Below are positions 4,752-43,336 of a stretch of 64,000 nucleotides of DNA, piece by piece (position 1 is the stretch's first letter; every line of letters begins with the position of its first letter). The stretch is from assembly GCF_006345805.1 (NCBI RefSeq), contig NC_042997.1:147994001-148058000 (forward strand). The letters run 5' to 3'. A program made the translations under genes and the position numbers. The notes under the pieces were generated by a model. That model searched no databases. It was not told the origin of the DNA and saw only the letters and a list, made by a program, of their open reading frames with translations. The stretch is from Octopus sinensis (lineage: Eukaryota).

Positions 4752-6186
<1,435 letters not shown>

Positions 6187-12954: not shown

Positions 12955-14305
12955 GGCGAATAGCTGCGCAACTCAACACCTTGTTAAATGCCGACCAAGT
13001 AACACCAGAGTGGTTGACATTGGGTAGGACAGTGCTGTGCTTGAAAAACATCGATAAAGGCAATACCGTAGAAAATCCCATGCCGATATCCTGTTTGCCA
13101 CATGAGCAGTAGGGTTGAAGGCGTAAGTACAGAGATACGAAGGATCAACTCCTGATAGACAAAACTGTACTTAGAGACTCTAAGAAGAGGAAAATTAACT
13201 TAGCCATCTCATGAATCCACTATCGTATAGCGTACGATGTGATCTCACATTTTTGGATTATGGAATGTATGAACCTATTTGGAATTGCATCGAATATTGA
13301 GCGATTGCTTGAAAAAAGAATGGCGAATTGGAGGACGGACCTGACAGCATACAGAAGAAGTTTAGGGACAGTAGAAATTTAGAGGGGCATCTACCAAGGG
13401 GACTGCCTGTCCCCACTAATCTTTTGTACTGTGCATGATACTACTGACACTGATCCTAAGGAAAGCAAAAGCTGGGTATATATTCAAGAGCCATCAACAA
13501 AAATCAACCATTTGTTATTCATTTATGACCTCAAACTTTGTGGTAAAGATGAAGCCCATGTCAGTTCCCTCGTTGATACGGTGTATACTACCAGTGCTGA
13601 TATCAGAATGGAGTTCGGACTGAGAAAGTGTGGTGTGTAAGTCTTGAAGACAGGCAAAATCAAATATGTGGACGGGCTAACGATACCGTCGGGGGAGGTT
13701 ATGAAGCAGATAGAAGTGACGAGCTATAAGTACTTGGGGATTTTGGAAATGGATAAATTGATAAAGAAACAAATGACAGAAAAATTTAACGTGGAGTACT
13801 TGCGCAGACTCAGACTGATACTTAAGTCGAAATTAAACGGACGGAATAAGATCGAAGCTATCAACACCTAGGCGGTTGCACTCCTTAGATAATCGCACGG
13901 ACAGTAGTCGAACTAAACATCATAAACATCATAGACAAAAAGAATCGGAAGTTGCTAACTAGATATAGGTCACTCCACCGAAAACGTGACACAGACAGCC
14001 TGTATGTATCCAGATAAAAAGGGGAAAGTGGAATTAGTGGATGTGAACACAGCATTAAAGCAGAAGAAATCAACATAGCATGGTTTGTAAAAAATGCCAC
14101 ACTGGGAACAGTGATAAAATATCTCGAGAAGTACATGAAACAAATAGGGGCTGCAATAATGGTGGAGCACTTGCAGAAAGCAGCACTGCTTGGAACCGCC
14201 CGAAAACTCCGGAAGGTGCTCGAATTAAGAGGTGTCACCTTAGTTGTTTGGAATTTAACAGCTGACATAGTAGCTCATCTCCTGCGTTAGAAGCTGTGCA
14301 AAGGC
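12955..14305 (+). mobile_element. Degraded, internally deleted R4/Dong-type non-LTR retrotransposon (family C)
   Basis: [45 protein letters not shown] and LQKAALLGTAR remnants; 3' UTR ends ...AAGCTGTGCAAAGGC followed by (AAT)n. Confidence 0.88.
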
Positions 14306-18549: not shown

Positions 18550-18701
18550 AACATTATTTACATTATTTACATTTGACGGATATTTGTCCTCATCTTGTTT
18601 GTTGTTAACAAAACAGTTCGGCTGATATACCCTCCAGCCTTCAGCACGTGTCTTGAGGGAATTTCGAAACTGGGTTAAGGTATTTTCGATGTTATTGTTA
18701 T

Positions 18702-18734
<33 letters not shown>

Positions 18735-18745
18735 TATTATTATTA

Positions 18746-18797
<52 letters not shown>

Positions 18798-18863
18798 GGT
18801 CACTGCTTGGAATCGAACTCGGAATCTTGGGGCTAGTAGCCTGTGCTCTTAACCACTACGCCA
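18550..18863 (-). mobile_element. Composite SINE-like element: tRNA-derived head, (AAT/ATT)n spacer, degenerate hammerhead module
   Basis: Minus strand GGCGTAGTGGTTAAGAGC...GAGTTCGATTCC (A/B boxes, 18797-18863), then microsatellite, then GACAC-GTGCTGA-AGGCTG..CAGCC-GAAC (18607-18652). Confidence 0.65.
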
Positions 18864-19352
18864 CAGTGTTTAAGAGCGCGGGCTACTAATCCCAAGATTC
18901 CGAATTCGAGACAGCAATTATGCTGTGTCATTTCTGTGGAAGATGCAAGATTGCTCTCTAAATATAGACAGATGTACAAAGGCCAGGAAGATGACCATCA
19001 TAGCAATCTATCACTCAACAAAAAGACAACTCACACGCGAGATTGGCTGAAAAATCAACATAAAATTAAGTGTCGCGGTGCATTCTACGAGTGGTAAGTG
19101 GAGAGGAATAGCATCTTCTGCGTTCAAACAAGTTCATCGTATCTGGGATAAATACTAACAGATTATTAATCACATAGGAATAGGACTGGATGACAGATAA
19201 TTTAAGATGGCCCCAATTCAACATGACATCATACACCACGCACAGTTGTATATTTGAGGTAGCATTATGTAGTTTAAGTAAATGGGGAATCGTACACCTT
19301 TAGTATTAGGTATGTTAATCTCATACATTAATTTGACCAATTACAACTGACG

Positions 19353-23105: not shown

Positions 23106-24171
23106 CGTCAGTTAAAGACTGCTGTAGGTTTGGTAAAGACGAGTTACTGGGTGAAAGCATATTGCACAGAAGCACCCGTTTTATAGATATGATGTTACTA
23201 GTCCTGAGCAAGAAAAACTGTATATTATAATGAGGTTTCAGCTCGTATTCCATTTGGATGAATATGGAATTAACTCCTTGTCCACATTACTCCTAGGTTC
23301 GCTCTCACTGGGGATGGTAGTATATTCCAATTAAAAGCCATGGTTCAAATTGGCAAATTGTAAAACGTTCTTCTCTGTCTACTTGAGAATTGAACAAAAC
23401 TTATGCCTCAGTGGGATATCGGCAGAAAAGGAGACTGAAAAATATACACTGTAAATAAACTGGTAAAAAGCAACGGAAAAATCACTGCGGTATCTTTCTC
23501 AAAGAAAATCATGGCTTGAGAATTTGGCAGGAAGATTTGTGGTCACTGAGTCAATATAATCAGTAATACCACATATAGGAAGATAGAGACAGAAATATAG
23601 CAAGAGAAAGAGGAATTGATACCATGCGTTTGTTATCTCTGTGAAGTGCTTCTTATCACCAGGGCATCAATTTAAAAGTATACTTGCAAATTCTGAGATC
23701 TGAACTGCATTCGAAACATTCTGTTCGACATCATATATGTTTGTGTTATTGTTGTCGGTGGTTACCGAAAATTTGTTTGAAATATTTCAGATTTTCACAA
23801 AAAATATCATAATTTTATACTTTTTCAAAATTAGAAACTCTACGTATAATACTACTGACTGTTGCATTTTCATTTTGTTTCGATGGTGTCTTACTCTGTT
23901 CCATATAATTTTTCATGATGAAGGGCGACTACAGTATTGATTAGGAATTTCTGTGCAAAAGAAAATGAAATTATTTTAAAAGTCAATTTATATCATACAT
24001 CGGTGCGGAAAAGTCTTTCAAACAGTTCATTAAAAATCTGTGTATGAAAGAAAATTTTTAATGAAATTTCTCTATTTCAGTTACATTAGAAATACATTCA
24101 GAATCCTAGGAGTAATTTCAGGCACGTCTGCACAAAGGCACGTTTGAACAAAGTCAGAAGTCAATAATAAT

Positions 24172-24252
<81 letters not shown>

Positions 24253-24254
24253 TC

Positions 24255-24435
24255 CTAACGTTTGGCAGAAGGCCAGCAGTTTTGGGTGGAGCAGGCTAGT
24301 CGCTTACATTGGTAGCAGTACTTGCTATCGACCTCCAGAAAGTGAAAGTCAATGGTAACATCAATGGCATTTGAACTTAGAAGGCAAGAAGCTAGCGGAA
24401 GTGCCGCTGAACATTCTACCAGTTTTCCGCTCTCA
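24255..24435 (+). mobile_element. Degenerate S1 SINE-like remnant between microsatellites
   Basis: GGCCAGCAGTTTTGGG...TACTTGCTATCGACCTCCAGAAAGTGAAAG similar to the 15195 copy. Confidence 0.55.
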
Positions 24436-24437
24436 TA

Positions 24438-24549
<112 letters not shown>

Positions 24550-24612
24550 TAATAATAATAATAATGCTGATGATGGTGATGGTGGTGAAGGTGATAGTAA
24601 TAACAATAATAA

Positions 24613-27600
24613 CTGACAGATCCCGTCTTTTTCCCTTTCTTTTCGTTTCCTTCTCCGTATTTTATTCTCATTATTTCGAACTAATACAGACACAGTAAGC
24701 CTTGAAGAAAGGAAGAGGAGGAAAGGAGGAAAAAAAAAAAATGTCCGGAGATAAAACTATCAACAAAAAAAATACAGACGAATATAGATCTGCTAGTCTT
24801 AAGAAGCGGCGCTATGAGCAATGCTTACATGTAGTGAACCCTAAACTGACAGAGCCATCTCCTAATATAAGAATGGATGCTCGTCATGCTTCAAGGTCAA
24901 CAAATCAAACAATAAACCGCATTGGTCATTGCGCGGATTACAAAAGACCACGTACCCGAAAATTGAACCAAATCCTGATTGAAAAATCAGTTACTGGATC
25001 AAATCTTCCCAACACACAGGAGCTGGACGAACCCCACAACCGGAATATTCCAACAGATGGCCATCCATGCTCATCACCAAATAATCAAAAGAAAAAGAAG
25101 GAAAAATGGTCTAGGGAAGATAATAAAGAAGTTCTTGAGGCCTTCTACCATGCCATATATTTCCCCACAGATAAGTCTAGCACTGTACAAGCATACTTAA
25201 ACTGGAGACAGAAACACCCTGAAGTAAGACCCTACATAGACAGTAACAAGCTTGCCAATGTTAGAAGAAACATTATAAAAAAGAAATTACTGACTGAAGT
25301 AGAGATTGATCAGGTTAGACAAGCAATATCGGATAAAATGAACGAAGCTGCAGCTAGAGAAGATAATACAGAGGAAATGATTATAGACCAGCCCAGGGCG
25401 GATAAAAACGAAGAGAGGATTGAAAGAGTTAGTATAAGTGATAGGCAAAGTGAAATACGCCCTGAACCAATCATAAACACTAAGACAGATGAGCATCAAA
25501 TAGATAAAGAAAGTCACACAAATATTGACCCAACAGAACTACATGAGCTAAAAAATCAAATCATGATTGAATGGCTGAAAATTAAAGAAACCAGCATGGA
25601 TGAGCGTGATACACTTCCTAAAATCCGCAACTCTAACCAAAACATGAAAATAATTGGTAAAATCCGGCTTGCACTTAAGGATATAATTTCAGTTAATGAT
25701 GTTGATATCACAAACCTCAACCACCTATACTATGCATCCGCGAAAATCTCAACGATCCTATGTGGTGTAAAGATTAGAAAACGGCAACAGTCCCACAAAA
25801 AGCCTTCTTGGCAAGAGCGTCTGCAACAACAAATTAAATATTTAGATCTGACATTGAATATTTGAAAAACCTTAAGGCTCACAAGACTACCAAACCTACA
25901 AAAACCCAAAAATTACTGAAAAAATACAATATGAAAACTATACTTGATATTGATGCCACCATAGAAACCATCAAACAAAAGGTATCTGCCAAAGCTGCCC
26001 GCATAGCGAGGTATGAAAAGCGTGTTAGATTTTTCAAGGACAACAACATGTTCAAAAATAACACCAAGAATTTTTACAGGAAGATAGGAAAAACAGCGTT
26101 TACTGCAGGGTCTGTACCATCAAAAGAAGAAGTGCAGAGATTTTGGAATAAAATCTGGGCAGAAGAAAAAACACACAACGAAAAGGCCCCCTGGATTGAC
26201 AGAATATCTACAGAACTGGACCTCTTAGAAGAGCAAAAGTGGGAGGGTGTCAAGGTAGAAGATATAAGATCTGCTCTCAGGAGGTCAAGCAAATGGAAGT
26301 CTCCAGGAAAGGATAAAATTCCTAACTTCTGGCTGAATGCCTTCCCAGAGAGCCATGAACTGCTAACAGAACTGTACAATGATGTTTTGCAACACCCTAG
26401 TAGGATGCCTCCTTGGCTAGTTAATGGGTTAACATTCCTGCTTCCAAAAAGTGAAGAAACAAATGAACCAAAAAACTATAGACCCATAACCTGCTTAACA
26501 ACTATGTACAAAACACTAACATCTGTCCTGACGGAATATACCTATAGTTTTTTAACAGACAGCAGCATATTCCCTAATGAACAGAAAGGATGTAAACGTG
26601 GATCCTACGGCTGTAAAGACCAACTACTCATCAATAAGATGATCTTAGAAGATTGTCACAAACGACACAAAAACTTATCAATAGCCTGGATAGACTATAA
26701 AAAGGCTTTTGATAGCCTACCACATAGCTGGATTAGGAAATGCCTTGAAATGTATAAGATAGCACCAACTCTGCGAAACTTCTTGACTGTAAGTATGAGA
26801 TCATGGAGAACCACACTAACTCTGAACAGTGACAGTGAATCCCTAAATGCTGGTGATGTAAAAATTTCGTGTGGCATTTTCCAGGGTGACTCACTGTCAC
26901 CACTCCTCTTTTGTTTATCCTTAATACCTCTCTCAAAGCTGCTCAATGACGCGCAGTACGGGTATAAAATGTTTGATAAAAATATAAATCATCTCGTTTA
27001 CATGGATGATTTAAAGCTTTTTGCAAAAAATGATCAACAACTCAAGGGCTTACTAGCGATAGTCAAACAATTCAGTGACGACATCAGAATGCAATTCGGC
27101 CTCGATAAATGTGCAAAGGCTACCTTTATCAAAGGAAAAATGACAGAAACATCTAACGTTAGCCTTGACCAACAGAATGTCATAAAAGAACTAGACCCAG
27201 CGGAGAGCTACAAGTACCTAGGGGTAATTGAAGGGAAGGGAATAAGGCATTCAGAGATGAAGGAAAGGATCAGGAGAGAATGCTATCGAAGAGTGAGAGC
27301 AATACTCAAGACAGAGCTGAATGCAAGAAACAGGATCGAAGCAATCAATGCATTAGCTATACCAGTCGTGACTTACAGTTTCAATATTGTTAACTGGTCA
27401 ATTACTGAAATATGTCAGCTCGACAGAAAAATAAGGAAACTGTTGACAATGCATAGAATGCACCACCCTAAGGCAGATACAGAACGACTCTATCTGCCAA
27501 GAAAAGAGGGAGGCCGTGGTCTTTTGCAACTGGCAATAACAATGAAGATTGCTACAATTGGCCTAGACACCTACCTGAAAAACTCTGAGGACTGGATGTT

Positions 27601-28774
27601 AAAACTTGTCTCAAAACATGAAAACAAGAAAGCATCATACTCAGTCACAAAACAGGCAAAGGAATATCTAAGTGAATTCCGAATACAACCAATTTCGGAA
27701 TTAGAGATAGACATACAAGAAACAAGCACAGAAAAAGCTAGGCGCATGAAAACCCGTGCCAAAACTGCGGCCTTAGATATTCTGAATAATAAATGGCAAG
27801 AAAAACCTCTCTATGGCAAATACCCAAAGAGAGCGAATAATGCAGATATCGACAAAGCCCTGACCCATCAATGGCTAATGGCCTCTGGCTTAAAATCTGA
27901 AACAGAGGGGTTTATCATAGCAGCTCAAGATCAATGCCTACCAACAAGAAACTACCAGGCCAACATATTAAATATCAGAAGCAGTCCAACGTGTCGTGTA
28001 TGCAAGCAACAAAATGAAACCATTGACCATGTGGTCTCCAAGTGCAGTCTTCTAGCGCCTACAGAGTATCTCAACAGGCACGATAGAGCTGCACAATATA
28101 TTCACTGGGTAATCTGTAAAAACCTGGATTTGCCCCATGAAAAAAACTGGTGGGAACACAAACCACCCCCAGTGCTTGAAAATGACCACATCTCACTCCT
28201 CTGGAACTTCACCATTCAAACTGACAGGAAGATAGATGCAAATAGGCCAGACATCATATTGAAAGACTTCAAACAAAGAACATGCCTCCTCATTGATATG
28301 ACTGTCCCAATCGATATAAACGTATCTGTCAGGACCTACCAAAAACTGAGCAAATATAAAGATCTTGAAATAGAAATCAGCAAAATGTGGAAGCTGAAGA
28401 CTAAAACAATACCTGTTGTCATAGGTGCCCTGGGAATGATAGCAAAAGGGGCTGATAGCTACCTAACTCAGATACCAGGAAACCCAAAAATGGCAGAAGT
28501 TCAAAAGATAGTGCTCATGGGAACTGCTCATATCCTACGCAAAATACTCTCTATGTAACCTCAAGGTTTAAAACAACCATAATTTTCGGTTTAAAAAAAA
28601 AAAAAAAAAAAAAACTTTTTTTTTAGACATTCATTAGTACAACATCCCCACCCCCCAAATATATGGCACACTAGGCATAACAACAACATGAACTTCCAAC
28701 CCTGTTGTCTCTTGAGGTCTCTGGGTGAGACTTGGAGCCAACTTGTACAAATATAAAGCAAAAGTCAAACATAG
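24613..28774 (+). mobile_element. Apparently full-length R4/Dong-clade non-LTR retrotransposon (family A), ~4.16 kb, inserted in (TAA)n
   Basis: Single-ORF architecture with Myb-like N-terminus, RT, CCHC knuckle and REL endonuclease; 3' UTR ends ...GTCAAACATAG then (AAT)n; (AAT)n-rich tract upstream. Confidence 0.95.
24741..28558 (+). pseudogene. Retrotransposon polyprotein (Myb-like/RT/zinc knuckle/REL), ~1272 aa if one frameshift at ~25844 is repaired
   Basis: KWSREDNKEVL; NYRPITCL; WIDYKKAFDS; GIFQGDSLSPLLF; YMDDLKLF; YKYLG; CRVC-X8-H-X4-C; RHD; RPDIILKD; KLSKYKDL. Adding one A at 25844 joins ORF 24702-25865 to ORF 25862-28558 as KYLRSDIEYLKN. Confidence 0.93.
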
Positions 28775-28817
28775 AATAATAATAATAATAATATAAATAA
28801 TAATAATAATAATAATA

Positions 28818-29575
<758 letters not shown>

Positions 29576-29599
29576 TAAATAATGATAATAATAATAATA

Positions 29600-29985
29600 A
29601 GAGCAGAATAGACAACACTACCTACAGCGACAAATGCATAATGTGTGGTAGGAGGGCTATAGTAAATATTCTGCCCAATAACACAGATTTGCTTGTCAGT
29701 TGTTTGACCTTAACCAGTTGAGCATTCCCTTGGTGGCTGACGATATGTGCATTTCTGATCACGAACAGAATTAGCGGGGGAGCATGATAGCCTTGTATTG
29801 AAAGTAATTTTGGGGGTTTACCACCGGAAAATATGGGTGGTTCGTTCATCATCCTTATACAACTTTTATGCAGGGACCTTTTGAGTGGGATGGGCTACTC
29901 GACCAGAAGAAAATTCTAATTGGACCCCATCTGCAAAGTATTGCGCTGTTTATCTTCATATGAGAACACCATGTCGCGCACGTAC
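29600..29985 (+). mobile_element. Diverged partial copy of non-coding (TAA)n-associated element D
   Basis: CACAGATTTGCTTGTCAGTTGTTTGACCTTAACCAGTTGAGCAT...CCATGTCGCGCAC matches the reverse complement of 36152-36709. Confidence 0.8.
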
Positions 29986-31388
29986 AGAGAGAAGAAAATA
30001 AATTGAGAAGAGAAGAACATGTTAATATTGAAATCACTTGCAAGTTCATTGCAAATCAAGCTTTAAAATAATTATATTCGAAGTCACACAGACCAGGCAA
30101 CTGGTATGGGTTCCGGTTGAAGCTCATTACCAAAGTAAGATATATAGATGAACGTTTTCCTGCTTCGAAGTAATCATAAATTGGATGACTAAAAGCAAAA
30201 TTTAACTTGTCATCAAGAAAGACAAAGATCTTAAGACCTCAAACTACAGACATAATTTTCAATAAAGTTTCTTGACAGGAGCTTTTGCAAATAAGGAGCG
30301 AGATTTATTCTGTATTAAACAGAAAGGTTATCGAAATGACTGCCAAAAAAAGTAAACAACGAAATATAAATAAACAAGCGAAAGAAAAAAATAAGAATAT
30401 TAATCAACAATATATTCGTAACATAATGCTTTAGGAGAAGAGCTAATGTAACAAAACCGCGGATTGTTTATAAATTTCCGTATTCTTAGATTTTTACGAC
30501 ACAGAATATGTTCAAAATTACGTGACATCATTGATTTGTTAAGAGTAAGCACACAAAATTGGACAACAGATTTAACTCTACGTGGGCACCAACAAGAAAA
30601 AAGTCAAACTGCTTGGTGTTGACAGTTAGTGTTGTTAGTTTTTTCTCTTATCTTCAGGAGCCTAGAACTGATAAATTAAAATGTGGATACTAATTAAAAT
30701 AGCAAAAGAAAGTTAACCATTTATTATTCATAGACGATCCAAAGATTTTTGACACGACTTACAGTATATTGTATCATATTTTCGGTATGCTGACAATATA
30801 TTTTGAGAAAAATAGATGCGGTAATTTCAAGCGCGGAATCCTTTTGAGTAAGAAATGGACATGCTTAACGAGAAAGTACAAGAGGTTGACACTGATGAGG
30901 TTTAAAAATAGCTGTGAGTTATCGAACCTGATTGCATAAAGATTGGATAAAGTAGTAAGGGGAGAATATTTCCAAGAGTTGAGAAAGTTATTAATATGCG
31001 AGCACGATGACGTAAATACCATAACTTCCACAAAATGAGCAGTATCAAACCAAATATTGTCCGTGAATAATCAATTCAATACGGAATTTTTCTTAAGAAG
31101 TCAGTTTTGAAAGTAGTGAGTTTGAACCTAGTTTCCATGATCAAGTAACAAGATACATAAGTAAGTATATCGATAATGAAGATGTCTATGACTGATGTAT
31201 AATTTATGGTGAAAAAACCCCCACATACCTTATATGCTCTTGATGTGCGGTAAGCAGGGAAAATCCATTTCACGAATATTTGATTGCTCCCTAGAGCCAG
31301 ATTCCTTCCATTACATATAGGTTTAAAATGACAGTTGCGTATATAAAGCAGTCATGAATGAAGTTAGTATATAAATGGGGAGCTAATA

Positions 31389-31570
<182 letters not shown>

Positions 31571-32343
31571 TACATACTGTTATTGGTCAAAATTAGTTTT
31601 GATGTGTACAGAAATGTGAGCGTTAATTAACTAATAGATTAATTACATCTGTTTTCTTTGATATATTTTGATTTAAATGACATAAAGTCTGTGTTTATCC
31701 GGTCAGTCAATGTGTTACAACCCAGAACAAGCGAAATCATGAACTCATATTCTATAGAATGCTGTAAAATATAAATTTACGGTTTTCCATACAGTTATTA
31801 TATTACATATTATTATTATATGATTATGTAAACGTATGAAAATGTTTTACCCACTCTCTCACATAAAACCATAGACATACACACATATATACACATATAT
31901 ATTACATATATACGCATGTGAATAGGCAGGCTCACATAAATATATAGTCTAAACATAAAATGTCTATGCCTCCATATTTGTCGCTCACAAAGCATTTCAT
32001 TCACAAACTCTCTCTGCATCGCTTCTTTTCTATTTTGTATTTCATAAGAATAATTTTATTTTATTAATTTTTATTTTGACTTCATAAGTTTTCCTAGATA
32101 TGTTTAACACTTCATTCGCGAATGATATATGATAAACCTTGTGTGAAAATACGTTCGGAAACGGAAGAAATTATTTGTTACAGCATCTTACTTGCTCACG
32201 GTGAAAAAAAAACGGAGTAATCTTACATGAACTTCGAGTGTTTTGTGAAAATTTTCTCGTATAGAACTTTTCAATATTTCTATGATTTATCAATATGTAT
32301 AATAGCTTCCTGAATCACTACTGCTATATACATACATACATAC

Positions 32344-32830
<487 letters not shown>

Positions 32831-33099
32831 TATGTGTGTGTGTGAGTTTGTTCGTGTGTGTTGTACGCATGTAAATATTATTTTGTGTTACAGTAAAGTT
32901 CTATCGTTACATATGTACAGTAATTTAAATACTTGGAAAGAATTGAATCATTCCCATGTCTACTTTCAGAATAATACTATCCTAGGTTACGTAAGCTGTG
33001 GATCTTTGATACGGCTTCGCGTATAGACATTTGATTAGAACAAATTTGTTGCGGCAAGGTATCTATTGCAGTATTATTTTCACTAGAGAATCAACTCGA

Positions 33100-33275
33100 T
33101 ATTAGTTGTGGCTGAGCAGGGAATGATCTAGACTACAGAATATCCAGGACTCACTGTAAGCATCACCACCACCACCACCGCTAGGCGTTCTTAATTTTTT
33201 TCGCGCCAAATTCAGAACAACTTCAGCATGGCCGCGGCCTTCGGGCTAAAACATTTTTAAGGATTTAAGGATTTA
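33100..33275 (+). mobile_element. Probable LINE/SINE 3' tail with short AAGGATTT repeats
   Basis: CAGCATGGCCGCGGCC...AAAAC motif resembles the S2 SINE tail; terminal AAGGATTT x2. Confidence 0.4.
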
Positions 33276-33542
33276 TAAAGAGTAAATATCCAAAAGCAAA
33301 TAACTATATAGACATTATTATTGCTATTATTATCTGTGATAAATATAGATGATTGATAATAACAACAACAATAATATAGGTGACTGCAGGCATTAAATAA
33401 CCATAGATATCTATACAGTTAACGATTCTATTTATCATAAGGGCACACGAATTTTTCAGTGTCATTGGTGGTTAAGTTGAGTATTTTAGCTCTACTTTCT
33501 AGTAGGTAAGCGCCTCATGTGCCCTTATGATAAATACACACA

Positions 33543-33606
<64 letters not shown>

Positions 33607-33659
33607 ATTTGTATTTTTTATTTTTCTTTATCGTCAATGATCCGTAGACAAAATTATAT

Positions 33660-33960
33660 CATTCTCACGTCAAGTTTTGCTGTGTCCAAAATATGACCTG
33701 GCTGCAAATTCTCTCTGAACCGTTTCTACTTCAGATATTTCCTTCTTGTAGATGGTTTTTGCTCCCTACGACTGGTGAGCACCAACTAATCTTGCCTGTA
33801 TTGGATGGCAGTAAACACGTCTGAATTCTCAGACTTTTGATATACAATACTTTTCATCCCGCAGGGTTTCCAAAAATCACCATTCTCACCATGCATGTTT
33901 CCTGGGGTTTCCGGTTTAGTTTCCGAATATTTACCCATGTAAAAGGTTGTGCTGAAATAC
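33660..33960 (-). mobile_element. Degraded CR1-like LINE RT fragment
   Basis: Minus strand WCSPV...YKKEISEVETVQREFAAR resembles the CR1 'YCSPVWSP...LE.VQR.FT' block. Confidence 0.6.
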
Positions 33961-35724
33961 ATGTTACCGGTAGCACTAGAAGGACCTGACATATACATGT
34001 ATGTAAGCAAACATATGATCTAGCATTTTAACGCGGGCCAGTAGCAGAAAAGAACGGCAGATAGTACTTATACCTATACGCATTGGTACGTTACAATTCG
34101 AGGAGCTGCTTCACCAAGATTAACTGTTTTATTAAGGACTTCTTTATCGATTTAGATACAATTTTCTCTAATTCATCTTTTGGAATGTACCGTTTTTATT
34201 TTGTTTACTAGTAATAGCAGGAGGAACGCATGCATTTGTTGTCTATCGAACAAGATATCTACTAGAATTACGAGAACTTCATATTTACGGCTCTTTTCTC
34301 TGTTGCATTTCCAATCGTTCATGGTTGTAGAAACTGGTGCATCGATGGAATACATTCCACGTATTATATAGTTACCTAATCTCACCGGATTCAACTATGA
34401 ACTATCATCTTTCCGATGTAATGAAATATTATACAAGTATTCACCTCGATGTAATCAATTATAAAACTACCCTTATCAAATTTAAGGCAAGGCATTGGAG
34501 CAAATATTGACAATTTTCTCTTCCTCGTTTTTCTCTTCCTTTCCTTCTTTTACTATTGCTTTTAACGATACTAGTACAGTAATATTTTTATCCCTATTGT
34601 TATTGCTATTAATACTGTAGTTATTATTAAAGTGACAGGCAGGCAGAAACGTTAGGTTGTCGGACAAAATTCTTGCGCCATATATCCTATCCTTTATGTT
34701 TTTTAGATCAAATCTCGCAAAGGTCAGTTTTACTTTTCACCTCTCCAGGAACGATGTAATCAACTATCTCCCAGATGCATAAAAATTGCTGACTTTATGG
34801 CAATCGTTTATATATTTATATATTTATATATTTTGAAAAGTTTTCAGCAAGTGCAAAAGATTCTTCTGACCCTCACGTTTGGCTAAATTTGACATTATTT
34901 TTCCTATGATTTTCAAAAATAAATTATATTTTTATGTACTTCATGTCTTGTTGGCAAAAACTCGTCAGATTTTATTGCATTTAATTCTCGCTTTATATCG
35001 AAAATAAATGATTTATGTATTTTCAATGTTACTTCATTGGCTGTTAACGGCGCCAAAATGTTTGGATTAATATATGTACAAGCATGACTATTATACAAGA
35101 AAGTACATTTTACTTCTTCAAATGAATTTATTTTGATATCATATTAATATCTTGATTATTATCGTGGTGGGAATTGACTCGATTCATGATGATGCCCAGT
35201 GAACCGACTAACACCAACCAAAAAATTTAGAAAAAAATTAATGAACGAAAGATGGTTCGTGTTCATACTATTTGCTCTTCCTTTGAATCAACACATATCC
35301 CCACAGAGTCATGCCTGAATTTATACTCTTTTTGTGCTAGTTTTGTCTCTTTCCCAAAGATTTTGTCTTTGCTCTCTATGGTTTATTGGTCTTTGACTTA
35401 TCACATTCACTCTAATGGCTTGTTCCAGAATGGTTATAAGTAACTATACAGTTTCTCGGTTCAGGTTTTCGTCCGGCAGGCATAACCAGCATTCTACACA
35501 TCCAACATTCTAGGGTTGTTGCATGAATCGATCATGTTTTTCTAGTTATTTCATTTTTTCGTGTTTCTTTATGTTCTTGAATTATCCTACAATTTCAATA
35601 CATTTTTGGAAATATTTAGCCGCCGATATGTTCCTTACTAACTACGTACCACATGGGTTTTTCGACCCAATAACCTGGTACTGATGGTATTTTTGTATTC
35701 ATCAATATTCTACTCCTTCCCTTC

Positions 35725-36065
35725 TTCAGAAAGCTCAAAAGACAACAAGTTAGAAGTTCATTTTGGTATTATGCCTAGGGTGTCATATATTTGGTTTTGT
35801 ACATAGTGTTGTTCTAGGGAATGTTTAAGAAAACCATGAGCAAGTTATGATGGTTTTAAAATTTGAGATTAGACAGACGGTATTTTACGTAGGATACCGG
35901 CAGTTCCCATGTGCACTATCTTTTGAATTTCGGCTATTTTGGGTTTTCCTGGTATCTGAGCTAGGTAGCAATCAGCTCCTTTTGCCATCATTCATAGGGC
36001 GCCTAGATTCCACATTTTGCTCATTTCTATTTCAAGATCTATATAATTCCTCAGTTTTTGGTAGG
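35725..36065 (-). mobile_element. Diverged family A R4/Dong 3' fragment
   Basis: Reverse complement aligns to 28337-28720 (CTACCAAAAACTGAG...CAGATACCAGG...CTAGGCATAA) with a short deletion. Confidence 0.85.
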
Positions 36066-36105
36066 TTAAGATCAGAATCCATGAGAGCCACTGCCTGGTA
36101 CTGCA

Positions 36106-36151
<46 letters not shown>

Positions 36152-36709
36152 GAATGAGAGAGCAGTGCATGCCATCAAAGTGACACTGGGGTAAAATATA
36201 CGAAGCCCTATATACCCATCATGACTACCCGTCTGATAAGGGTACACCAGGCACATGCATCACAACCATATGTGCGCGACATGGTGATCTCATATCAAGA
36301 TAAACAGCACATGACCTTGCAGGTGGGGCCCAGTTAGAATTATCTTCAGGTTGAGTAGCCCATCCCGCTCAAAAGGTCCCTGAATAAGGGTTGTTTAAGG
36401 ATGTTGAAAGAACTACCCATGTTTCCAGAGGTGAACTATTCAAACCCCAAAGAATCCCTCTCAACACATGGCTATGATGCTCCCCCACTACTTCTGCTCG
36501 TGATCAGAGATGCACATATCGTCAGCCACTAAGAGACATGCTCAACTGGTTAAGGTCAAACAACTGACAAGCAAATCTGTGGTATTGAGCAGAATATTTG
36601 CTGTAGCCCATCTTTTATACCAAGACAAAACAATGTACATGTTAACACTTCCAATCAGTTAAGATCAGAAGCCATGAGAGCCACTGCCTGGTACTGCATC
36701 AGGGCATTT
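36152..36709 (-). mobile_element. Non-coding ~558-bp element D flanked by (TAA)n on both sides
   Basis: Near-identical copy with the same ends at 60148-60683; no long ORF; orientation assigned by the TAA strand. Confidence 0.85.
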
Positions 36710-36732
36710 ATCATTATTACATTATTATTACA

Positions 36733-36862
<130 letters not shown>

Positions 36863-36868
36863 TTATTA

Positions 36869-36923
<55 letters not shown>

Positions 36924-36961
36924 TATTATTACTATTATTATTATTATTATTATCATCATCA

Positions 36962-37019
<58 letters not shown>

Positions 37020-37039
37020 CATCATCATTATTTTTATTT

Positions 37040-38845
37040 TTGGATGAACACGGGATCTGACCCTCTCACCTCTCTGACTTGGTAGCACTGTATGTTGAAA
37101 TCCCAGAGTAGTTCTGTATTGTTCGTTTTCCAGTACTCCCTCTGGCTTGTGTTCATACCATTGTTCAGCTCTCTCGAGTTTTGCTTTACCACACAACAAC
37201 CAGTGAACATATTTGGCCACATAAAATGTCTCCTTTTGTTTTCACTTCTGTGAACTTACATCACTCACTATCAATATAGCTTATACTTTCTCCTTTCTCA
37301 GAGCTCATCCTACACTGTTGCGAGCCAATGCTTTTATCAATGTGATATTTGGTGTAGTATGTTCAGAGAGCTTGTTCCTGAGCGCTGCAAACTAATGCCT
37401 TAGTAGGTCATTTTAAGTCTCCTTTCTGCAGCCATTGCCAGTTTCTATTCCAATCAATCCCATCTTTATTCTTCAAAAACTGTACAGTTTCTTGTCCTGC
37501 CAAATGTTTTTCATCTGCTCTCTCTGGTCTTCCTTAAATCGTGTCGGATCTACGGATTCGTTCACTTTTAAAGTTCCCTGCATTTTCACTGCTTCAGTCA
37601 TTTTTTCTTTACTCCCTTTGACGGTGGGCTATTCTCCTCTTCCCTTACGCAACCTTCATAACACCTCAATCTCCGTCCTCCTTCTTTCCTCTTTAAATAC
37701 AATCTTGACACATCACTCTTGGGCTGTAGTTCCTCGTTCATTGGCATTGATTTACGTGTTCTCCTGTCTGTCTCTTGTAATTCATACTTCTTCCAAGATA
37801 CTATCCCATATCTCATCAATGTGTTAATTGCTCTAATCTTATAGTGGCCATTCAGCTTCGAATGGAACACAAGCCGAGTCCTCCTCAAATGCACTTTCCT
37901 GTACATTTTTTTATCTTGTATTCATTCATCTTATTTGTTTCGATGACACCCATGTTCTTATATCCTTCCTCACTGACTTCGTTTATAGTTTCGTCACTTA
38001 CCAGCTTGATCCTATGGCTTTTACTGATTTCCCCCTCATTTGAGAATCACTACACCACATTTTTCGATCCCAAATTCCAAACCAATATCTATGCTAATCA
38101 TCTGCACAGTTGCCGTCAAACACAGTTGCCAAAAAATGTTTTCTCGGTCTTCGCAAATAGTTTTAGGTCATCCATAAAGCACGGGTTGTTTACTTTAACC
38201 CTGCCTAGCATGCACCCCACACGCATCTCTCTTAAAACGCTGGTTAGTGGCAGTATGCAGACAACAAATAGGAGAGGCGACAGACTGTCCCCTTTAAAGA
38301 TTCCTCTTTTGATATTTACCTCTCCCAACTTATCTCTCCATGCTGTGAGTTCAGTTCGCCGCGTTGCCATTGAGTTTTGTATTAACTTTACGATATTGTG
38401 GGAGTCCTTAAGCAGTTTAAGGCATTCAATAATCAAGGGTGTGGGACCATGTCATATGCTTTCCTGCAGTCCACCCATGGCATCGCCAATTTGTTTTGTC
38501 TCTTCTTGCAGTCAGCCAGGATAGTCTTATCGATTAATAATTGACCCTTTGTTCTTCTGCTCTTACGTCCACAGCCCTTTTGTTCCACTGGTAGTAAGTC
38601 GTTCTCATCTAGGTACTTATAGATGGTGTCTCCTAGAAGGGGTGTTCACGCGTTATGATTGCTTCTACCTCTTACGTATATACTATTTTGGTGGCTGTTG
38701 CCTCGTAAGAGTTCATTAGCCTTTTTATACAGGTCTTGTTTTGCTTCCTGTAGGGTGTCAAAATAGCAAGATTCATACGCTCTCCTCACAGAGCAAGCTC
38801 TGCAGGGCTACCGGTTTAGCGCCGTTGTCCAGACTACTAAAAATA
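37040..38845 (-). mobile_element. Degraded R4/Dong element (family C-like) with deletions
   Basis: GIFKGDSLSPLLF, FMDDLKLFAK, SKLNGHYKIRAINT, RLYLKRKEGGR and HWLLC...WYEHKPEGVLEN. Confidence 0.85.
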
Positions 38846-38862
38846 TTATTATTATTATTATT

Positions 38863-41506
38863 CAGTAGTTTTATTTTTATAGCGTGCTTTCACTTCACTA
38901 CCGAGCGCAGCTCTGTGTGCCTTGGGTATGTGCTGTGATTTGTTGTGATGCTCTGATGGTTATTGTATGGAAAGTGTTTTGCGTAGGATGTGTGCAGTGC
39001 CTAGTAGTGCAATTTTCTGTATGTTATATGTGTTTGTAAGTACTGGTGTTTTTGTTATGTATTTGTCTGAATATTTTTTTATCATGCCTAATGCACCTAC
39101 TATGATAGGAATTGTTTCTGTTTTCAGATTCCACATTCTAGTTACCTCTATTTCCAGGTCTTTGTATTTTGAGAGTTTCTCCATTTCTTTTAGAGACACG
39201 TTGTCATCTGCCGGTATTGATACATCAATTAGAAAGCATTTTTTCTTCATGATCTCTGACAACTATATCTGGTCTGTTGGCCTTAATTTCTCTATCTGTG
39301 TGTATCGGCATATCCCAGAGTATGGTTGCTTTCTCGTTTTCTGTGACCTTTTCTGGTGTGTGCCTATACCATTTTTTTTCTGTTGTTATTCCATAATGTT
39401 GGCATAGCTTCCAATGTATGTAGGTTCCAACTCTGTCATGTCTGTGAATATATTCCTTCTTAGCCAGGACTGGGCAGCTAGAGATAATATGATTTATTGT
39501 TTCTTGTCCATCTCCACATATTCTGCAGTTACTTGTAATATTTCTTTTCATTACATGTTTTTGGTAATTTCTGGTGGGGAGGCTTTAGTCTTGTGCTGCA
39601 ATTAAAAATCCCTCTGTTTCTGCTTTGAGTCCTGAGCTTCTCAACCATTGCTGGGATTTTTCTTTGTCTATTTCTTTTGCGTTTAGTTTAGTGCAGTATT
39701 TACCATGAAGGGGCTTTTCTTGCCATCGTTTTATCATGGCTCGTTGCTGTTCTATTTTTGTTTGGATTTCATTTGTTTTATAGCTTTTGTTGTTTCTTCA
39801 TCATCTTCTTCTTCTTCTTCGTGTTTATTAGGTGGTATGATTTCTTGTTTGTAATTGTCAGCTTCCTTAAATACTGAGAACAGTTATTTGTTTTGCTCGT
39901 GTTTTGCTGCTATCTGGATCAGTTCTCCTTCCTTCTGGAGTAGGTATTTTTGCAGTCCTATGGTGGTTATTTTATAGTAGTTTTCCAGCTGTATAAGGCC
40001 TCTACCACCTTCGATACGTTGTATATATAGTCTTTCTATGTCAGATTTTGGGTGGTGCATCCTAGATCCTGTCAGTATTTTTCTTGTTTTCCTATCTATT
40101 TTGGACAGTTCATTTCGTGTCCAGTTAAGGATATTGTAGCTGTAACTTATAACTGGGACAGCTAAAGTGTTGATACCTATTATCTTGTTTTTAGCATTGA
40201 GCTCTGTTTTTAGTATTGATCTAACTCGTCTATAATATTCTTTTTTTTATTTTTCTCTTTCATTTGTGTGTGTTGTGTCTTGTCTAGTTCATGGATTCCT
40301 AAGTATTTGTAAGTTTGGCTTTGGTCTAATTCTTTTATTTCATTTGCTTCATCTAGTGTGATGTTGTTACTCTTAACTAGTTTTCCTCTTTTCATGGTTA
40401 CCTTGGCGCATTTTTCTAATCCAAATTTCATATCTATTTCTTTGGTAAATCCATGAACTGTCTTTAATAGTGTTTCCAGCTGTTTGTCATTTGCAGCGTA
40501 TAGTTTTAGGTCATCCATATATAATAGGTGGCTGATCGTTTTGCCGTAACATTTATATCTGCATCCAGTTCTATTTCGCATATCAGATAGAGGTGACAGT
40601 GCCAAGCAGAAAAGGAGTGGAGAGAGCGTGTCTCCCTGGAATATTCCTCTTCTAATGGGGATGTCTTTGGTTTTCATGAGTCCCTCTTTTGTTTGGAGGT
40701 GTAGGACTGTTTGCCATTTATTCATATAGTGCTCTATGAATTTTATGATTGTTGGTGCTACTTTGTTAATGGCTAGTGTTTCGAGGATACATGTGTGGGG
40801 GATGCTATCAAACGCTTTTTTGTAGTCAATCCAGGCCATACTGAGGCCTTTCTTCTTTCTGTGGCTGTCTTCAGTTACGGCTTTATTAATCATTAGTTGG
40901 TCTTTACAGCCATATGAGCCTTTGCGGCATCCTTTCTGCTCTTCTGGGAACAGCTTGTTTTCGTCCAGGTGCTTGTTCAGCCTTTGCGATATCACTGCAG
41001 TAAATGCCTTGAACATAGTAGGGAGGCAGGTTATTGGTCTGTAGTTTTCTGGTTTTGCTGTTTCATTTGATTTGGGAATTAAGATGGTTTTCCCCTTCGT
41101 GAGCCATTCAGGCATTGTCTCTGGCTCTGCTAGTATGCTGTTAAAGTTTTCAGCCAGCTTTTTGTGCATTCCTGTTAGATATTTCAACCAGAAGTTGGGG
41201 ATCTTGTCATGCCCAGGTGCCTTCCAGTTGCTTAGTTTTTGCAGTGCCTGGGTGACCTCTTCAGTTGTTATGGGGGTCCAAAGTTATTCAGATGCCGAGT
41301 TTGTTATTTTGATACTCCTTTTTTTTGGCTGTTCGTTCGCCGACCATATTTCTCTCCAGAATTCTTCCAATTCTTCTGCCGTTGGTGCTGCAGTGACTCC
41401 TATTTTATTTTTTCCCAGTTCTTGGTAGAACTTTTTGGAGTTGGAGTTGAACTTTTTGTTCTGTTCAAAGAAGCGTTGGCGTTTCTCGTACCGGCGGATC
41501 CTTATT

Positions 41507-41508
<2 letters not shown>
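38863..41508 (-). mobile_element. 5'-truncated R4/Dong element (family B), ~2.65 kb, flanked by (TAA)n
   Basis: RT core ORF 40210-41187 (GIFQGDTLSPLLF, YMDDLKLY); CRIC...H...C and RHD at 39225-39551; REL at 38960-39262; several frameshifts in homopolymer runs. Confidence 0.95.
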
Positions 41509-41579
<71 letters not shown>

Positions 41580-43336
41580 CATCATCATTATTATAAATGA
41601 AGTGAATATAGGAAAGCTACATATTACATGGAATTAATTGTTATATGCAATGATGTACAGGATCGCTACAGTATAAATTTAGTGTCTATTAAAGTATAGC
41701 ATTAACTTTGCATGTGATTATAAAATAGATGCAGGGGTCTAACATATGAACACGGAATTTGGCTGCAAATAAAATAGTCAAGTAGCCTAACGATACTTAA
41801 AGTTATAGAGTACATCGGCAATATAGATTATTAATGACTATAAAGCGAAGCGTAAAAAAGTATACCGCCTTTAAAACTTGCAGCATTACTGTCTCCACAT
41901 ACATTTTACAAATTTCTAGTGGAGACAGTCTATAGTTTTCTCAACATTTTGTTGTTAGTCTTTGGTATGTTTTGTTATTTAATCGTCTCTCTTAGTAAGT
42001 GAAGATTACTTAAGTAATAGTGTATTTTATATATGAAATTATATATTGAAAATTACAATTCATATATTACCCAGTTTTTGCACATATCAATATGCAGAGG
42101 AAATTATATATATATATATATTGTTCATAGACTAAGCGTATTTCTGCATTCGTAAACTTTTCAGTTTCTAAATACAGTTAATATCGTTTTATACTACTTC
42201 ATCTAAAATCGAACGCTTCATTCATAAATATTGTTCTACTGCATATTTATAAATACGTTTTCGTGTATTGTATTCCAGTTGCGTATTATTGCCTGAAACA
42301 TTTCAAAAACGTCGACTACTCTCCACAAGTGAAAATCTAATTTGTTAGAACTACAATTTCCATAAAGTTTTCTAGAATCGGAGAGTTGACATTTGAAAAA
42401 TACAAAAAGAGAAAAAATGAGCGTACAGGAAAATAAATATATTACGACCAAATTAATGAGAAAACACATTCAGCAGCGCTGAACATTGGTGGTTAGAAAC
42501 AAATTAATATGGATGATAAATTTGTTTGCATACTTTCGTTCTTTAATATATATTCCGTAAAATTTCTTACAGTTTAATCATTCCTAATCCATGAATCTAT
42601 GGCATATGTGTGTATGTGAGTGTGCATATTATGTGTATATACACATAATATTATATTCACTGACATCGTCTATCAGAAAAATCTATCATGAATTTTATAT
42701 AGGTAGCGTACAGCTTATAACGGCTCTGTTATTTAAAGTATAGGCTTCACAACTGTTCGCTTCCTTCAATTGTTAAACACTTCTATCCACAATGAAATTT
42801 CAATGTGAAAACTCTATTTAAAACAATCACAAACTAGGGCAATACTGATTTAGCTAAAGAAATTTTTATATGTATCAGATTCAAACTGTTATTGCTTTCC
42901 TGTCCTCGGTACAAGTAATTGCAGGTTTTCACTAACTGACGGCCCAAATGCATAGAAACAAATCTCAGTAACAGGATGTACAATTTGATTTTCTTCTAAT
43001 GAAGGAAATAACCAGCTGTGTGTATATATTTGTAAAATTTCCGAGGCAGACATGGTATATTATATAGAATATAAATATATAAAATCGATCTTGAACTTTC
43101 TAAATATTTTTATTAAAACTTTAGCAAAAATTTAATGAAAAATTTAATGACACCGTCGTTTAATGCGCAATATGCAAATTATGTCTAACTATTGCAGTTA
43201 GGTCCATAATAATAATTACAATCGTCTTATCGTCTGCTATTAACTGGCTACGAAACGTTTAAGGATGATATTTTTATATCTACTTGCAAAACATTACGCA
43301 TCCTGTGCTTTATTAACAGTAGTTTAACTATATATA

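What the first reader, a model, noticed from the sequence alone, without database searches (positions are those of the whole stretch)
36152..36709. Non-coding ~550-bp element with fixed ends, found only in (TAA)n arrays and co-oriented with R4/Dong LINEs: candidate non-autonomous partner
Seen: two copies (36152-36709, 60148-60683) share both ends and sit between TAA arrays. A diverged partial copy (29600-29985) and a 5' stub (36066-36106) follow the same strand rule. There is no ORF, no tRNA A/B boxes, no TIRs, and no obvious similarity to the 3' UTRs of families A, B or C. Known: R2-superclade REL elements mobilise SINEs and short internally deleted elements, and Dong targets TAA repeats. Inference: D uses a Dong-type target-primed machinery. 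Its fixed 5' end argues against random truncation and may reflect a promoter or a self-cleaving RNA.
Basis: partly seen in the sequence, partly recalled or inferred. Interest (0 to 1): 0.8.

Follow-up and report, generated by a model that had tools for sequence, protein, structure and literature searches.

The report
LINE-fragment-headed retroposon in TAA repeats
The ~550-bp repeat is real and was probably copied by the TAA-repeat-specific LINEs around it, but it is a chimera: 52 bases of a dead LINE gene fused to a non-coding body, with no sign of a ribozyme, which is fairly ordinary transposon biology.

Summary
The repeat is real. D1 (36152-36709) and D2 (60148-60685) are 97.4% identical apart from one 20-nt indel. 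A third copy (29654-29984) shares only a ~340-nt core. All three abut (TAA)n arrays in the same orientation as the R2-superclade, Dong-like LINEs in the window. So D's sense strand is the window's minus strand.

The "5' stub" (36065-36106) is not a D fragment. It is the first 42 nt of a 5'-truncated LINE copy (A', 36106->35675). D is also not unrelated to the LINEs: its first 52 nt are LINE ORF2 sequence from the restriction-like endonuclease motif C..ID.AVP.

At D1 the order is: 52-nt LINE piece, ~506-nt non-coding body X, (TAA)15, the same 42 nt again, then the rest of the LINE. This looks like X inserted into a dead LINE with a 42-bp target-site duplication. D2 carries the LINE piece along.

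I found no ribozyme, tRNA/5S/7SL head, ORF, TIR or shared LINE 3' end. The genome is absent from every searchable collection, so no census was possible.

Verdict: a plausible Dong-dependent chimeric retroposon of modest interest.

The parts
36152..36709 (-). D1, full copy (558 nt): head plus body X
   Evidence: blastn self-hit and match to D2. The sense strand is assigned from the TAA orientation and from the LINE-derived head.
36658..36709 (-). D1 head: 52 nt of LINE (family A') ORF2, reading KCPDAVPGSGSHGF. Its last 42 nt (36658-36699) are the left copy of the duplication.
   Evidence: Translation. Colinear alignment to LINE A ORF2 with apparent in-frame 9- and 3-nt gaps. The motif occurs only 5 times in the six-frame translation of the window.
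36152..36657 (-). Body X (~506 nt): non-coding, with its own 3' end ...CTGCTCTCTCATTC joined to AATAAT
   Evidence: No hit to the ORF2 C-terminal profile. No similarity to any LINE 3' end in the window. RNA folding z=-2.9 on the sense strand against +0.7 on the antisense strand.
36107..36151 (-). (TAA)15 tail between the 3' end of X and the right copy of the duplication
   Evidence: Sequence; TRF.
36065..36106 (-).
   Evidence: the repeat finder family D3, 98% identical, spacing 593. Contiguous with the LINE homology.
35675..36064 (-). Rest of the 5'-truncated, decayed LINE A' copy: ORF2 C-terminus with a frameshift and a deletion, then the 3' UTR. No TAA tail follows.
   Evidence: tblastn to ORF2 aa 821-898, 63%. 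Profile hit E=8e-16. Alignment A2. End coordinate.
36710..37038 (-). Upstream (TAA)~110 array separating D1 from the 3'-truncated LINE C fragment
   Evidence: TRF; sequence.
60148..60685 (-). D2, full copy (538 nt). Its head is 60634-60685. It lies between (TAA)47 (60687-60829, the tail of LINE E fragment) and (TAA)14 (60106-60147). No A' sequence lies downstream.
29601..29984 (+). Copy 3. A different 53-nt leader abuts (TAA)55. Then comes the ~340-nt core shared with X (29654-29984, 84%). X's last ~95 nt and any tail are absent.
24566..28774 (+). Intact Dong-like LINE A: ORF1 24702-25865 and ORF2 25862-28558, carrying RT, CCHC and the restriction-like endonuclease. It is a possible source of the enzymes.
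   Evidence: Pfam RVT_1 and zf-RVT. PDB R2 proteins match over aa 132-871. TAA flanks.

Best explanation
D is a chimeric, non-coding retroposed unit. It consists of 52 nt from the restriction-like-endonuclease coding region of a dead Dong-like LINE (family A'), fused to a ~506-nt non-coding module X. X has its own 3' terminus and is followed by TAA repeats.

Shown: at the D1 locus, X plus (TAA)15 lies inside a 5'-truncated A' LINE copy. It is flanked by a 42-bp direct duplication of that LINE's sequence. Joining the two flanks restores a colinear LINE ORF2.

Inferred:
- The duplication is the target-site duplication of an X insertion made by target-primed reverse transcription. The bottom-strand nick lay 10 bp beyond the array edge and the top-strand nick 42 bp further on.
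- D2 is a later retrocopy of such a composite. It carries the 52 nt of LINE flank as its head and landed in the TAA tail of another LINE fragment.
- The enzymes came in trans from the TAA-specific, R2-superclade LINEs that fill these arrays.
- The common 5' end reflects common descent, plus 5' joining inside TAA or A-rich sequence, not a promoter or ribozyme.

A variant I cannot separate: a composite A'::X LINE exists elsewhere. D1 plus the A' remainder would then be one 5'-truncated copy of it, and D2 a copy primed at the internal (UAA)15.
For: - 42-nt direct repeat at 36065-36106 and 36658-36699, 41/42 identical, bracketing X+(TAA)15 exactly.
- The right copy runs on without a break into ORF2 C-terminus and 3' UTR homologous to LINE A.
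- The D head extends that homology 10 nt further upstream (AAATGCCCTG against ACATGCC..TTG). It carries the clade motif C..ID.AVP as CPDAVP, which occurs only 5 times in the six-frame window.
- The joined flanks align colinearly to LINE A.
- Similarity between D and A' stops abruptly at CTTAAC.
- D2 has the same head but different flanks on both sides, so it is a separate insertion.
- All eight LINE pieces and all three D copies are co-oriented with the TAA strand. All 3' junctions read X|AAT....
- Head-to-stub divergence (1/42) and D1-D2 divergence (14/538) are similar.
- Relatives of the LINE in other organisms also sit in (AAT)n arrays in the same orientation.
- Long target duplications and template-jump chimeras are documented for R2-type elements (PMC3774820 reference list; PMC3414825).
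Against: - Only two full copies and one partial copy are available. There is no genome-wide census and no empty site.
- No other insertion in the window shows a target duplication to compare with.
- The A' copy lacks a TAA tail, and this is unexplained.
- The last ~6 nt at the 5' junctions of D1 and D2 differ more than the 2.6% body divergence predicts.
- 5' truncation at A-rich hot spots does recur here. The A and B fragments both start at ORF2 aa ~757-760. An A' fragment starting 10 nt from D's start could therefore be coincidence.
- X's 3' end shares nothing with any LINE 3' end in the window, so the partner LINE is not identified.
Confidence: 0.55

Rival explanations
1. D is a dedicated non-autonomous family, like a SINE or a SIDE (short internally deleted element). 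Its fixed 5' end is made by a promoter or a self-cleaving RNA, as in Bombyx Dong, whose 5' HDV-like ribozyme cuts at the TAA/element junction.
For: - Dong and R4 have 5' HDV-like ribozymes (PMC3774820).
- Two copies share the 5' end to within a few nt.
- The sense-strand RNA is more stable than shuffles: z=-2.9 for D1 and -1.8 for D2.
- Among the 14 D1/D2 differences, one pair is compensatory, A-U to G-C.
Against: - The 5' end is decayed ORF2 coding sequence, not a LINE 5' end.
- No ribozyme family in Rfam matches at E<=10.
- My HDV-like descriptor gives 2 hits against 1.5-2 in shuffles, none at the junction. It finds nothing at LINE A's own 5' end either.
- Copy 3 has a different leader and no excess fold stability.
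Confidence: 0.12
2. Template-jump chimera. While copying X RNA, the LINE reverse transcriptase jumped to an A' LINE RNA, creating head+X elsewhere. D1 then happened to land next to an A' fragment truncated at the same A-rich hot spot.
For: - R2 reverse transcriptase makes 5' chimeras with tRNA and U12 in vivo (PMC3414825).
- Recurrent 5' truncation points exist at A-rich sites.
- These arrays are packed with LINE fragments.
Against: - Known jumps go to the 3' end of the acceptor RNA, not to a point inside ORF2.
- It needs a coincidence. The neighbouring fragment must be of the same family (41/42 identical), must start 10 nt from D's start, and must lie exactly after D1's tail.
Confidence: 0.15
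3. D is simply the 3' end (end of ORF2 plus a long 3' UTR) of an undescribed or recombinant Dong-like LINE family. The two copies are 5'-truncated at a hot spot.
For: - The head is ORF2 sequence in the right place. LINE A has 430 nt from that point to its 3' end, against ~506 nt in D.
- 5'-truncated LINE tails are common here.
Against: - A profile of the ORF2 C-terminus from 120 homologues detects the B, A' and C fragments but nothing in D (E>2).
- The head is 98% identical to A', yet similarity falls to nil at one base.
- Stops occur in all frames.
Confidence: 0.1
4. D is not mobile. The copies arose by segmental duplication or array recombination. A further alternative is that D runs on the + strand as a retroposon with an (ATT)n tail, with the stub as a 5'-truncated copy.
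For: TAA arrays favour unequal exchange. On the + strand the stub is D's last 42 nt (minus 10) followed by a repeat, as a truncated copy would be.
Against: - The flanks beyond the arrays differ on both sides.
- The stub is contiguous with the LINE sequence, and D's end extends that LINE homology.
- Fold stability lies on the minus strand only.
- The orientation rule matches the LINEs.
Confidence: 0.05

Closest known systems
R2 SIDEs and R2 template-jump chimeras (Eickbush & Eickbush 2012, PMC3414825)
   Same: Short, non-coding, LINE-dependent units of the R2 superclade. They insert at the parent's specific target, and foreign sequence is joined to element sequence at the 5' side.
   Different: SIDEs keep the parent's 5' ribozyme and its 3' UTR. 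D keeps neither. It has 52 nt from codons ~791-808 of ORF2, and its 3' end is unlike any LINE 3' end in the window.
Dong (Bombyx mori) and other TAA-specific Dong elements
   Same: The autonomous elements here carry RT and a C-terminal restriction-like endonuclease, and they sit in (TAA)n in one orientation. Dong targets TAA microsatellites (PMC3812793).
   Different: D itself encodes nothing. Clade membership of the LINEs (R4/Dong as against other R2-like clades) was not tested by phylogeny. No HDV-like ribozyme was detected at LINE A's 5' end or at D's.
L1 5'-flank transduction and chimeric retrocopies; SINE-LINE pairs
   Same: A non-autonomous RNA is copied in trans by target-primed reverse transcription, with a tail, a target-site duplication and flank sequence carried along (from my own knowledge of L1 biology).
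   Different: The tail is (TAA)n, not poly(A). D has no pol III head: no A/B boxes or tRNA/5S/7SL match, and two to three T4 runs on the sense strand. No shared LINE 3' tail was found.
R9 of rotifers (very long target-site duplication)
   Same: An R2-superclade element that makes an unusually long target duplication (title cited in the reference list of PMC3774820). This makes 42 bp plausible.
   Different: R9 is an rDNA-specific autonomous element with no relation in sequence. It is cited only as a precedent for the length.

Membership tests
SINE (pol III retroposon with LINE-derived tail) | Head derived from tRNA, 5S, 7SL or snRNA, with an internal pol III promoter | tested here: not met
   ARAGORN finds no tRNA. 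Rfam at E<=10 gives no such family. The head is LINE ORF2 sequence. The sense strand has three T4 runs in D1 and two in D2.
SINE (pol III retroposon with LINE-derived tail) | 3' end shared with the partner LINE | tested here: not met
   No similarity to the 3' ends of A, A', B or E in the window. No common 3' hairpin. Families outside the window could not be tested.
SIDE (short internally deleted R2-type element) | 5' end of the parent element, including its self-cleaving ribozyme | tested here: not met
   The head maps to ORF2 codons ~791-808. Neither Rfam nor my own descriptor finds a ribozyme.
SIDE (short internally deleted R2-type element) | 3' UTR of the parent element | tested here: not met
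   The adjacent A' copy has a 3' UTR homologous to A's, and that UTR does not match X.
Insertion made by Dong-type target-primed reverse transcription | Fixed orientation relative to the TAA strand and a common 3' junction register | tested here: met
   All 3 D copies and all 8 LINE pieces are co-oriented. The junctions of A, B, E, D1 and D2 all read X|AAT. With only four independent families, this is weak statistically.
Insertion made by Dong-type target-primed reverse transcription | Dependence on a specific autonomous LINE's proteins | not testable with these tools
   This needs a retrotransposition or in vitro TPRT assay, or genome-wide co-amplification data.
Retrocopy with target-site duplication and carried-along 5' flank | Direct duplication of target sequence bracketing element plus tail, with restoration of the target when the flanks are joined | tested here: met
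   42-nt repeat, 41/42 identical. The joined flanks are colinear with LINE A ORF2. This is a single locus only.
HDV-like self-cleaving ribozyme at the 5' end | Nested double pseudoknot (P1, P1.1, P2, P3, P4) with a catalytic C, starting at the junction | tested here: not met
   The descriptor search gives hits equal to the shuffled expectation, and none at the junction. Rfam finds nothing. The descriptor is my own approximation, so a divergent ribozyme is not excluded.
R4/Dong clade (for the neighbouring LINEs) | RT followed by a CCHC motif and a C-terminal PD-(D/E)xK endonuclease, with no APE domain | tested here: met
   Pfam RVT_1 and zf-RVT only. R2 proteins in the PDB align over aa 132-871. 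The CCHC and RPD...D...K motifs are read from the translation.
R4/Dong clade (for the neighbouring LINEs) | Phylogenetic placement with R4/Dong rather than R2, NeSL, CRE or Hero | not tested
   No reference set of clade sequences was available. The assignment rests on the TAA target alone.

The most novel reading that the evidence does not exclude
X is a genuine dedicated parasite of a TAA-specific R2-superclade LINE. Either its structured ~500-nt RNA carries a recognition module unrelated in sequence to the LINE 3' UTRs, or a (UAA)n tail alone is enough for trans-mobilisation. The second case would be a relaxed mode in a superclade regarded as stringent. It would also account for the other short inserts next to TAA repeats in this window: the 185-nt element at 24253-24437 and the A/B-box tRNA-like unit at 18797-18870.
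Probability: 0.2. Interest if true: 0.6.

Novelty: new member of a known kind. Interest (0 to 1): 0.35.

Why it matters
If X is copied in trans by a TAA-specific R2-type reverse transcriptase, it would show what such an enzyme needs from its template. The requirement could be a specific 3' module or merely a (UAA)n tail. That bears on two things. One is how microsatellite-rich genomes build nested TAA/LINE clusters. The other is the use of R2-type proteins for template-directed insertion at repeated 'safe' sites.

Tried and rejected
- Census outside the window. Exact 21-24-mers from the invariant D core were scanned in JGI metagenome contigs (twice), IMG/VR and GTDB genomes, with 0 hits. LINE A ORF2 has no homologue above 64% identity among 5.8 billion proteins. 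Its exact product is not on record. The source genome is therefore not searchable and the organism stays unidentified.
- Rfam on 24000-42000 at E<=1 and on D1 at E<=10 gave only low-complexity chance hits.
- My own HDV-like descriptor, run on D1, D2, copy 3, LINE A's 5' end and element G, gave no signal above shuffles.
- A common 3' hairpin among A, B, E, D, G and A' was not found, and z-scores were ordinary.
- Covariation between D and copy 3 could not be judged. Three sequences are too few, there is one compensatory pair between D1 and D2, and that helix is broken in copy 3.
- D body as decayed ORF2 tail: rejected by the profile search.
- C fragment plus A' as two halves of one LINE split by the array: rejected. 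C is 33-46% identical to A at the protein level and A' is 63%.
- Target duplications around the other TAA clusters: none found.
- Similarity of the 185-nt element G to D or copy 3: none above shuffles.
- D or G in the relatives' loci L001 and L002: none.

Full report
**What is at the coordinates**

Reading 35800-37100 and 59900-61000 and running D1 against the window confirm the repeat.
- D1 lies at 36152-36709 and D2 at 60148-60685, on the same strand. A pairwise alignment gives 14 mismatches in 538 aligned nt (97.4%) plus one 20-nt indel.
- A third copy lies at 29984-29654 on the other strand. It covers only D positions 118-458, at 84.5%.
- A 42-nt match lies at 36065-36106.
- Every copy touches an AAT-type microsatellite (TRF).
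- No stop-free stretch exceeds 59 codons. ARAGORN finds no tRNA. There is no inverted repeat of 14 nt or more. Rfam gives nothing relevant at E<=1 over 24000-42000, or at E<=10 over D1.

**The neighbours and the strand**

The window holds an intact two-ORF LINE, here called A (ORF1 24702-25865, ORF2 25862-28558).
- It carries an RT domain and a zinc-binding RT-associated motif.
- Its ORF2 aligns with solved R2 proteins across aa 132-871.
- The translation shows a CCHC motif followed by RPD...D...K. This makes it an R2-superclade element with a restriction-like endonuclease.

tblastn with this ORF2 finds seven more LINE pieces of at least four families:
- B, 41502->38844, minus strand.
- A 98% identical 5'-truncated B copy, 28906-29452.
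- C, 38645->37039, minus strand.
- E, 12975-14305, and a second E piece, 61294->60830.
- A 5'-truncated copy of A, 59460-60071.
- A', 36106->35675.

All of them have (AAT)n on their own strand at the 3' side, and at the 5' side where it is visible. Relatives at 57-64% protein identity from other organisms are flanked the same way. These are therefore TAA-specific, Dong-like LINEs. Dong elements are the known TAA-targeting family (PMC3812793).

All three D copies obey the rule. D's 3' junction (..CATTC|AATAAT..CACTC|AATAAT) is in the same register as those of A, B and E.

RNA folding agrees with this strand. D1 sense gives -186 kcal/mol, z=-2.9, with 0 of 100 shuffles as stable. The antisense strand gives -136 kcal/mol, z=+0.7. 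D2 sense gives z=-1.8.

**The 'stub' is LINE sequence, and so is D's head**

On the minus strand, 36106->35675 is a 5'-truncated, decayed LINE copy (A').
- tblastn aligns ORF2 aa 821-898 at 63%.
- A profile of the ORF2 C-terminus built from 120 homologues scores it at E=8e-16.
- The nucleotide alignment to A and to the A fragment runs from the first base of the 'stub' to the 3' end.

The 'stub' is the start of that fragment. D's first 52 nt translate as KCPDAVPGSGSHGF. They match the stub at 41 of 42 positions and extend the LINE homology 10 nt further upstream: AAATGCCCTG in D against ACATGCC...TTG in A, with apparent in-frame 9- and 3-nt gaps.

The clade motif C..ID.(A/T/S)(V/I)P is present in 102 of 120 homologues. 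A relaxed form of it occurs only five times in the six-frame translation of the window: in A, in the A fragment, in the D1 head, in the D2 head, and at one other site. So D does share sequence with the LINEs, at its 5' end. The shared sequence is coding sequence of the endonuclease domain, not a LINE 5' end.

After ...GATCTTAAC the two sequences part abruptly. A' continues CTACCAAAAACTG (TYQKL..., as in A). D continues TGATTGGAAG....

**Anatomy of the D1 locus**

On the minus strand the order is as follows:
1. (TAA)~110.
2. AAATGCCCTG.
3. The 42 nt ATGCAG..CTTAAC.
4. X, ~506 nt.
5. (TAA)15.
6. The same 42 nt again, with 1 mismatch.
7. The rest of A', to its 3' end.

Joining the two flanks gives a sequence colinear with LINE A ORF2. 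This is the classical signature of a retroposed insertion with a tail and a target-site duplication, here 42 bp long. By TPRT geometry the bottom-strand nick lay at CCCTG|ATGCAG, 10 bp past the array edge. The top-strand nick lay 42 bp downstream.

D2 has the 52-nt head but no A' downstream. Its neighbours are the tail of an E fragment on one side. On the other side its own tail runs tail-to-tail into the tail of an A fragment. D2 is therefore a separate insertion of head+X.

The simplest history has three steps:
- X entered a dead A' copy.
- A transcript covering the 52 nt of flank plus X plus (UAA)n was later reverse-transcribed at another TAA site.
- Its 5' junction was resolved inside TAA or A-rich sequence.

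I cannot separate this from a variant in which a composite A'::X LINE exists elsewhere and both loci are 5'-truncated copies of it.

The divergence figures (1/42 for the duplication, 14/538 for D1 against D2) fit either version.

**What X is**

This is unknown.
- It does not score against the ORF2 C-terminal profile (E>2).
- It has no similarity to any LINE 3' end or to anything else in the window.
- No 3' hairpin is common to the LINEs and D.
- It is not a pol III SINE. It has no tRNA, 5S or 7SL match, and the sense strand has two to three T4 runs.
- Copy 3 shares only the ~340-nt core. It has another 53-nt leader directly on the array, and X's last ~95 nt and any tail are absent. Its fold is no more stable than shuffles.
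- So the core is a module found in more than one context. With three sequences, covariation cannot be judged. One A-U to G-C compensatory pair separates D1 and D2, but that helix is broken in copy 3.

**The fixed 5' end**

I found nothing to support it here.
- No ribozyme family in Rfam matches.
- A pseudoknot descriptor of my own gave as many hits as shuffled sequence, and none at the junction.
- The sequence in question is decayed coding sequence.
- The last ~6 nt before TGCCCTG differ between D1 and D2.
- Recurrent 5' ends occur here without any ribozyme. The A fragment and the B fragment, from families only ~50% identical in protein, both begin at ORF2 aa ~757-760, at A-rich sites with AT/AATAA microhomology to the array.

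**Limits**

The source genome is not in any collection I could search.
- The best ORF2 homologue is 64% identical.
- The exact product is not on record.
- Core 21-24-mers gave no hits in metagenome, viral or GTDB contigs.

All conclusions therefore rest on 2.5 copies in one 64-kb window. The partner LINE is not identified. The absence of a TAA tail after A' is unexplained. No second target duplication was found for comparison.

**Verdict**

D is best seen as a LINE-mobilised chimeric retroposon (LINE ORF2 fragment plus non-coding body X), with the birth of its head visible at the D1 locus. It fails the defining features of both a SINE and a SIDE. There is no evidence for a ribozyme or a promoter. 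It is a new member of a known kind, and its interest is modest unless a genome-wide census shows X to be an abundant, dedicated parasite of the TAA-specific LINEs.

Noticed in passing
window 18797-18909 (minus strand), with arrays 18692-18796: A tRNA-sized unit with a perfect A box (TGGCGTAGTGG) and a near-perfect B box (AGTTCGATTCC) ends ...CAGTGACCTT and is followed directly by (AAT)21. An inverted partial copy lies just upstream, forming a palindrome. ARAGORN and the Rfam tRNA model do not call it; Rfam reports only a miRNA-like hairpin hit. It may be a pol III SINE-like retrocopy with a TAA tail. If so, it is a better classical SINE candidate than D.
   Followed up: partly
window 24253-24437 (+): A 185-nt non-coding insert lies between (AAT)30 and (ATG)n(ATA)n, just upstream of LINE A. 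It ends ..CCGCTCTCAT|AAT. It has no similarity to D, copy 3 or any LINE piece. It is a second kind of short passenger in the TAA arrays.
   Followed up: partly
window 59462 and 28906 (5' ends of the truncated A and B copies): Two LINE families with ~50% protein identity have 5'-truncated copies starting at the same place in ORF2 (aa ~757-760). Both start at A-rich sequence with AT/AATAA microhomology to the array. This points to a truncation or joining hot spot.
   Followed up: partly
window 37039-37100 (minus) and 24645-24665 (+): LINE C stops at the RPD endonuclease motif (..GGGTCAGATCCCGTGTTCATCC) and is followed by (TAA)~110. A near-identical CAGATCCCGT string lies at the start of LINE A's apparent 5' UTR, just after the degenerate array. 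There may be a recurrent break or insertion point inside ORF2 between RPDIIL and C..ID.
   Followed up: no
window 60072-60147, 61331-61454, 18703-18796: Three places where an (AAT)n array flips directly into (ATT)n. At 60072-60147 the two halves are the tails of two oppositely oriented inserts (A fragment and D2) meeting tail to tail.
   Followed up: no
window 35675 (3' end of LINE A') and 29984 (end of copy 3): In both large TAA/LINE clusters, the most downstream element is followed by unique sequence with no TAA tail. All elements upstream of it have tails.
   Followed up: no
window 36650-36670 (minus strand), the head/X junction: The last bases of the head (CUUCUGAUC) and the first bases of X (GAUUGGAAG) form a 9-bp RNA hairpin with G-U pairs across the junction in both D1 and D2 folds. 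This may be chance.
   Followed up: no
window 4920-5453 (+): An ORF with HTH_32 and Mos1-type HTH_48 hits, which looks like a mariner/Tc1-like transposase remnant. The window as a whole is very rich in di-, tri- and tetranucleotide repeats (73 TRF rows).
   Followed up: no
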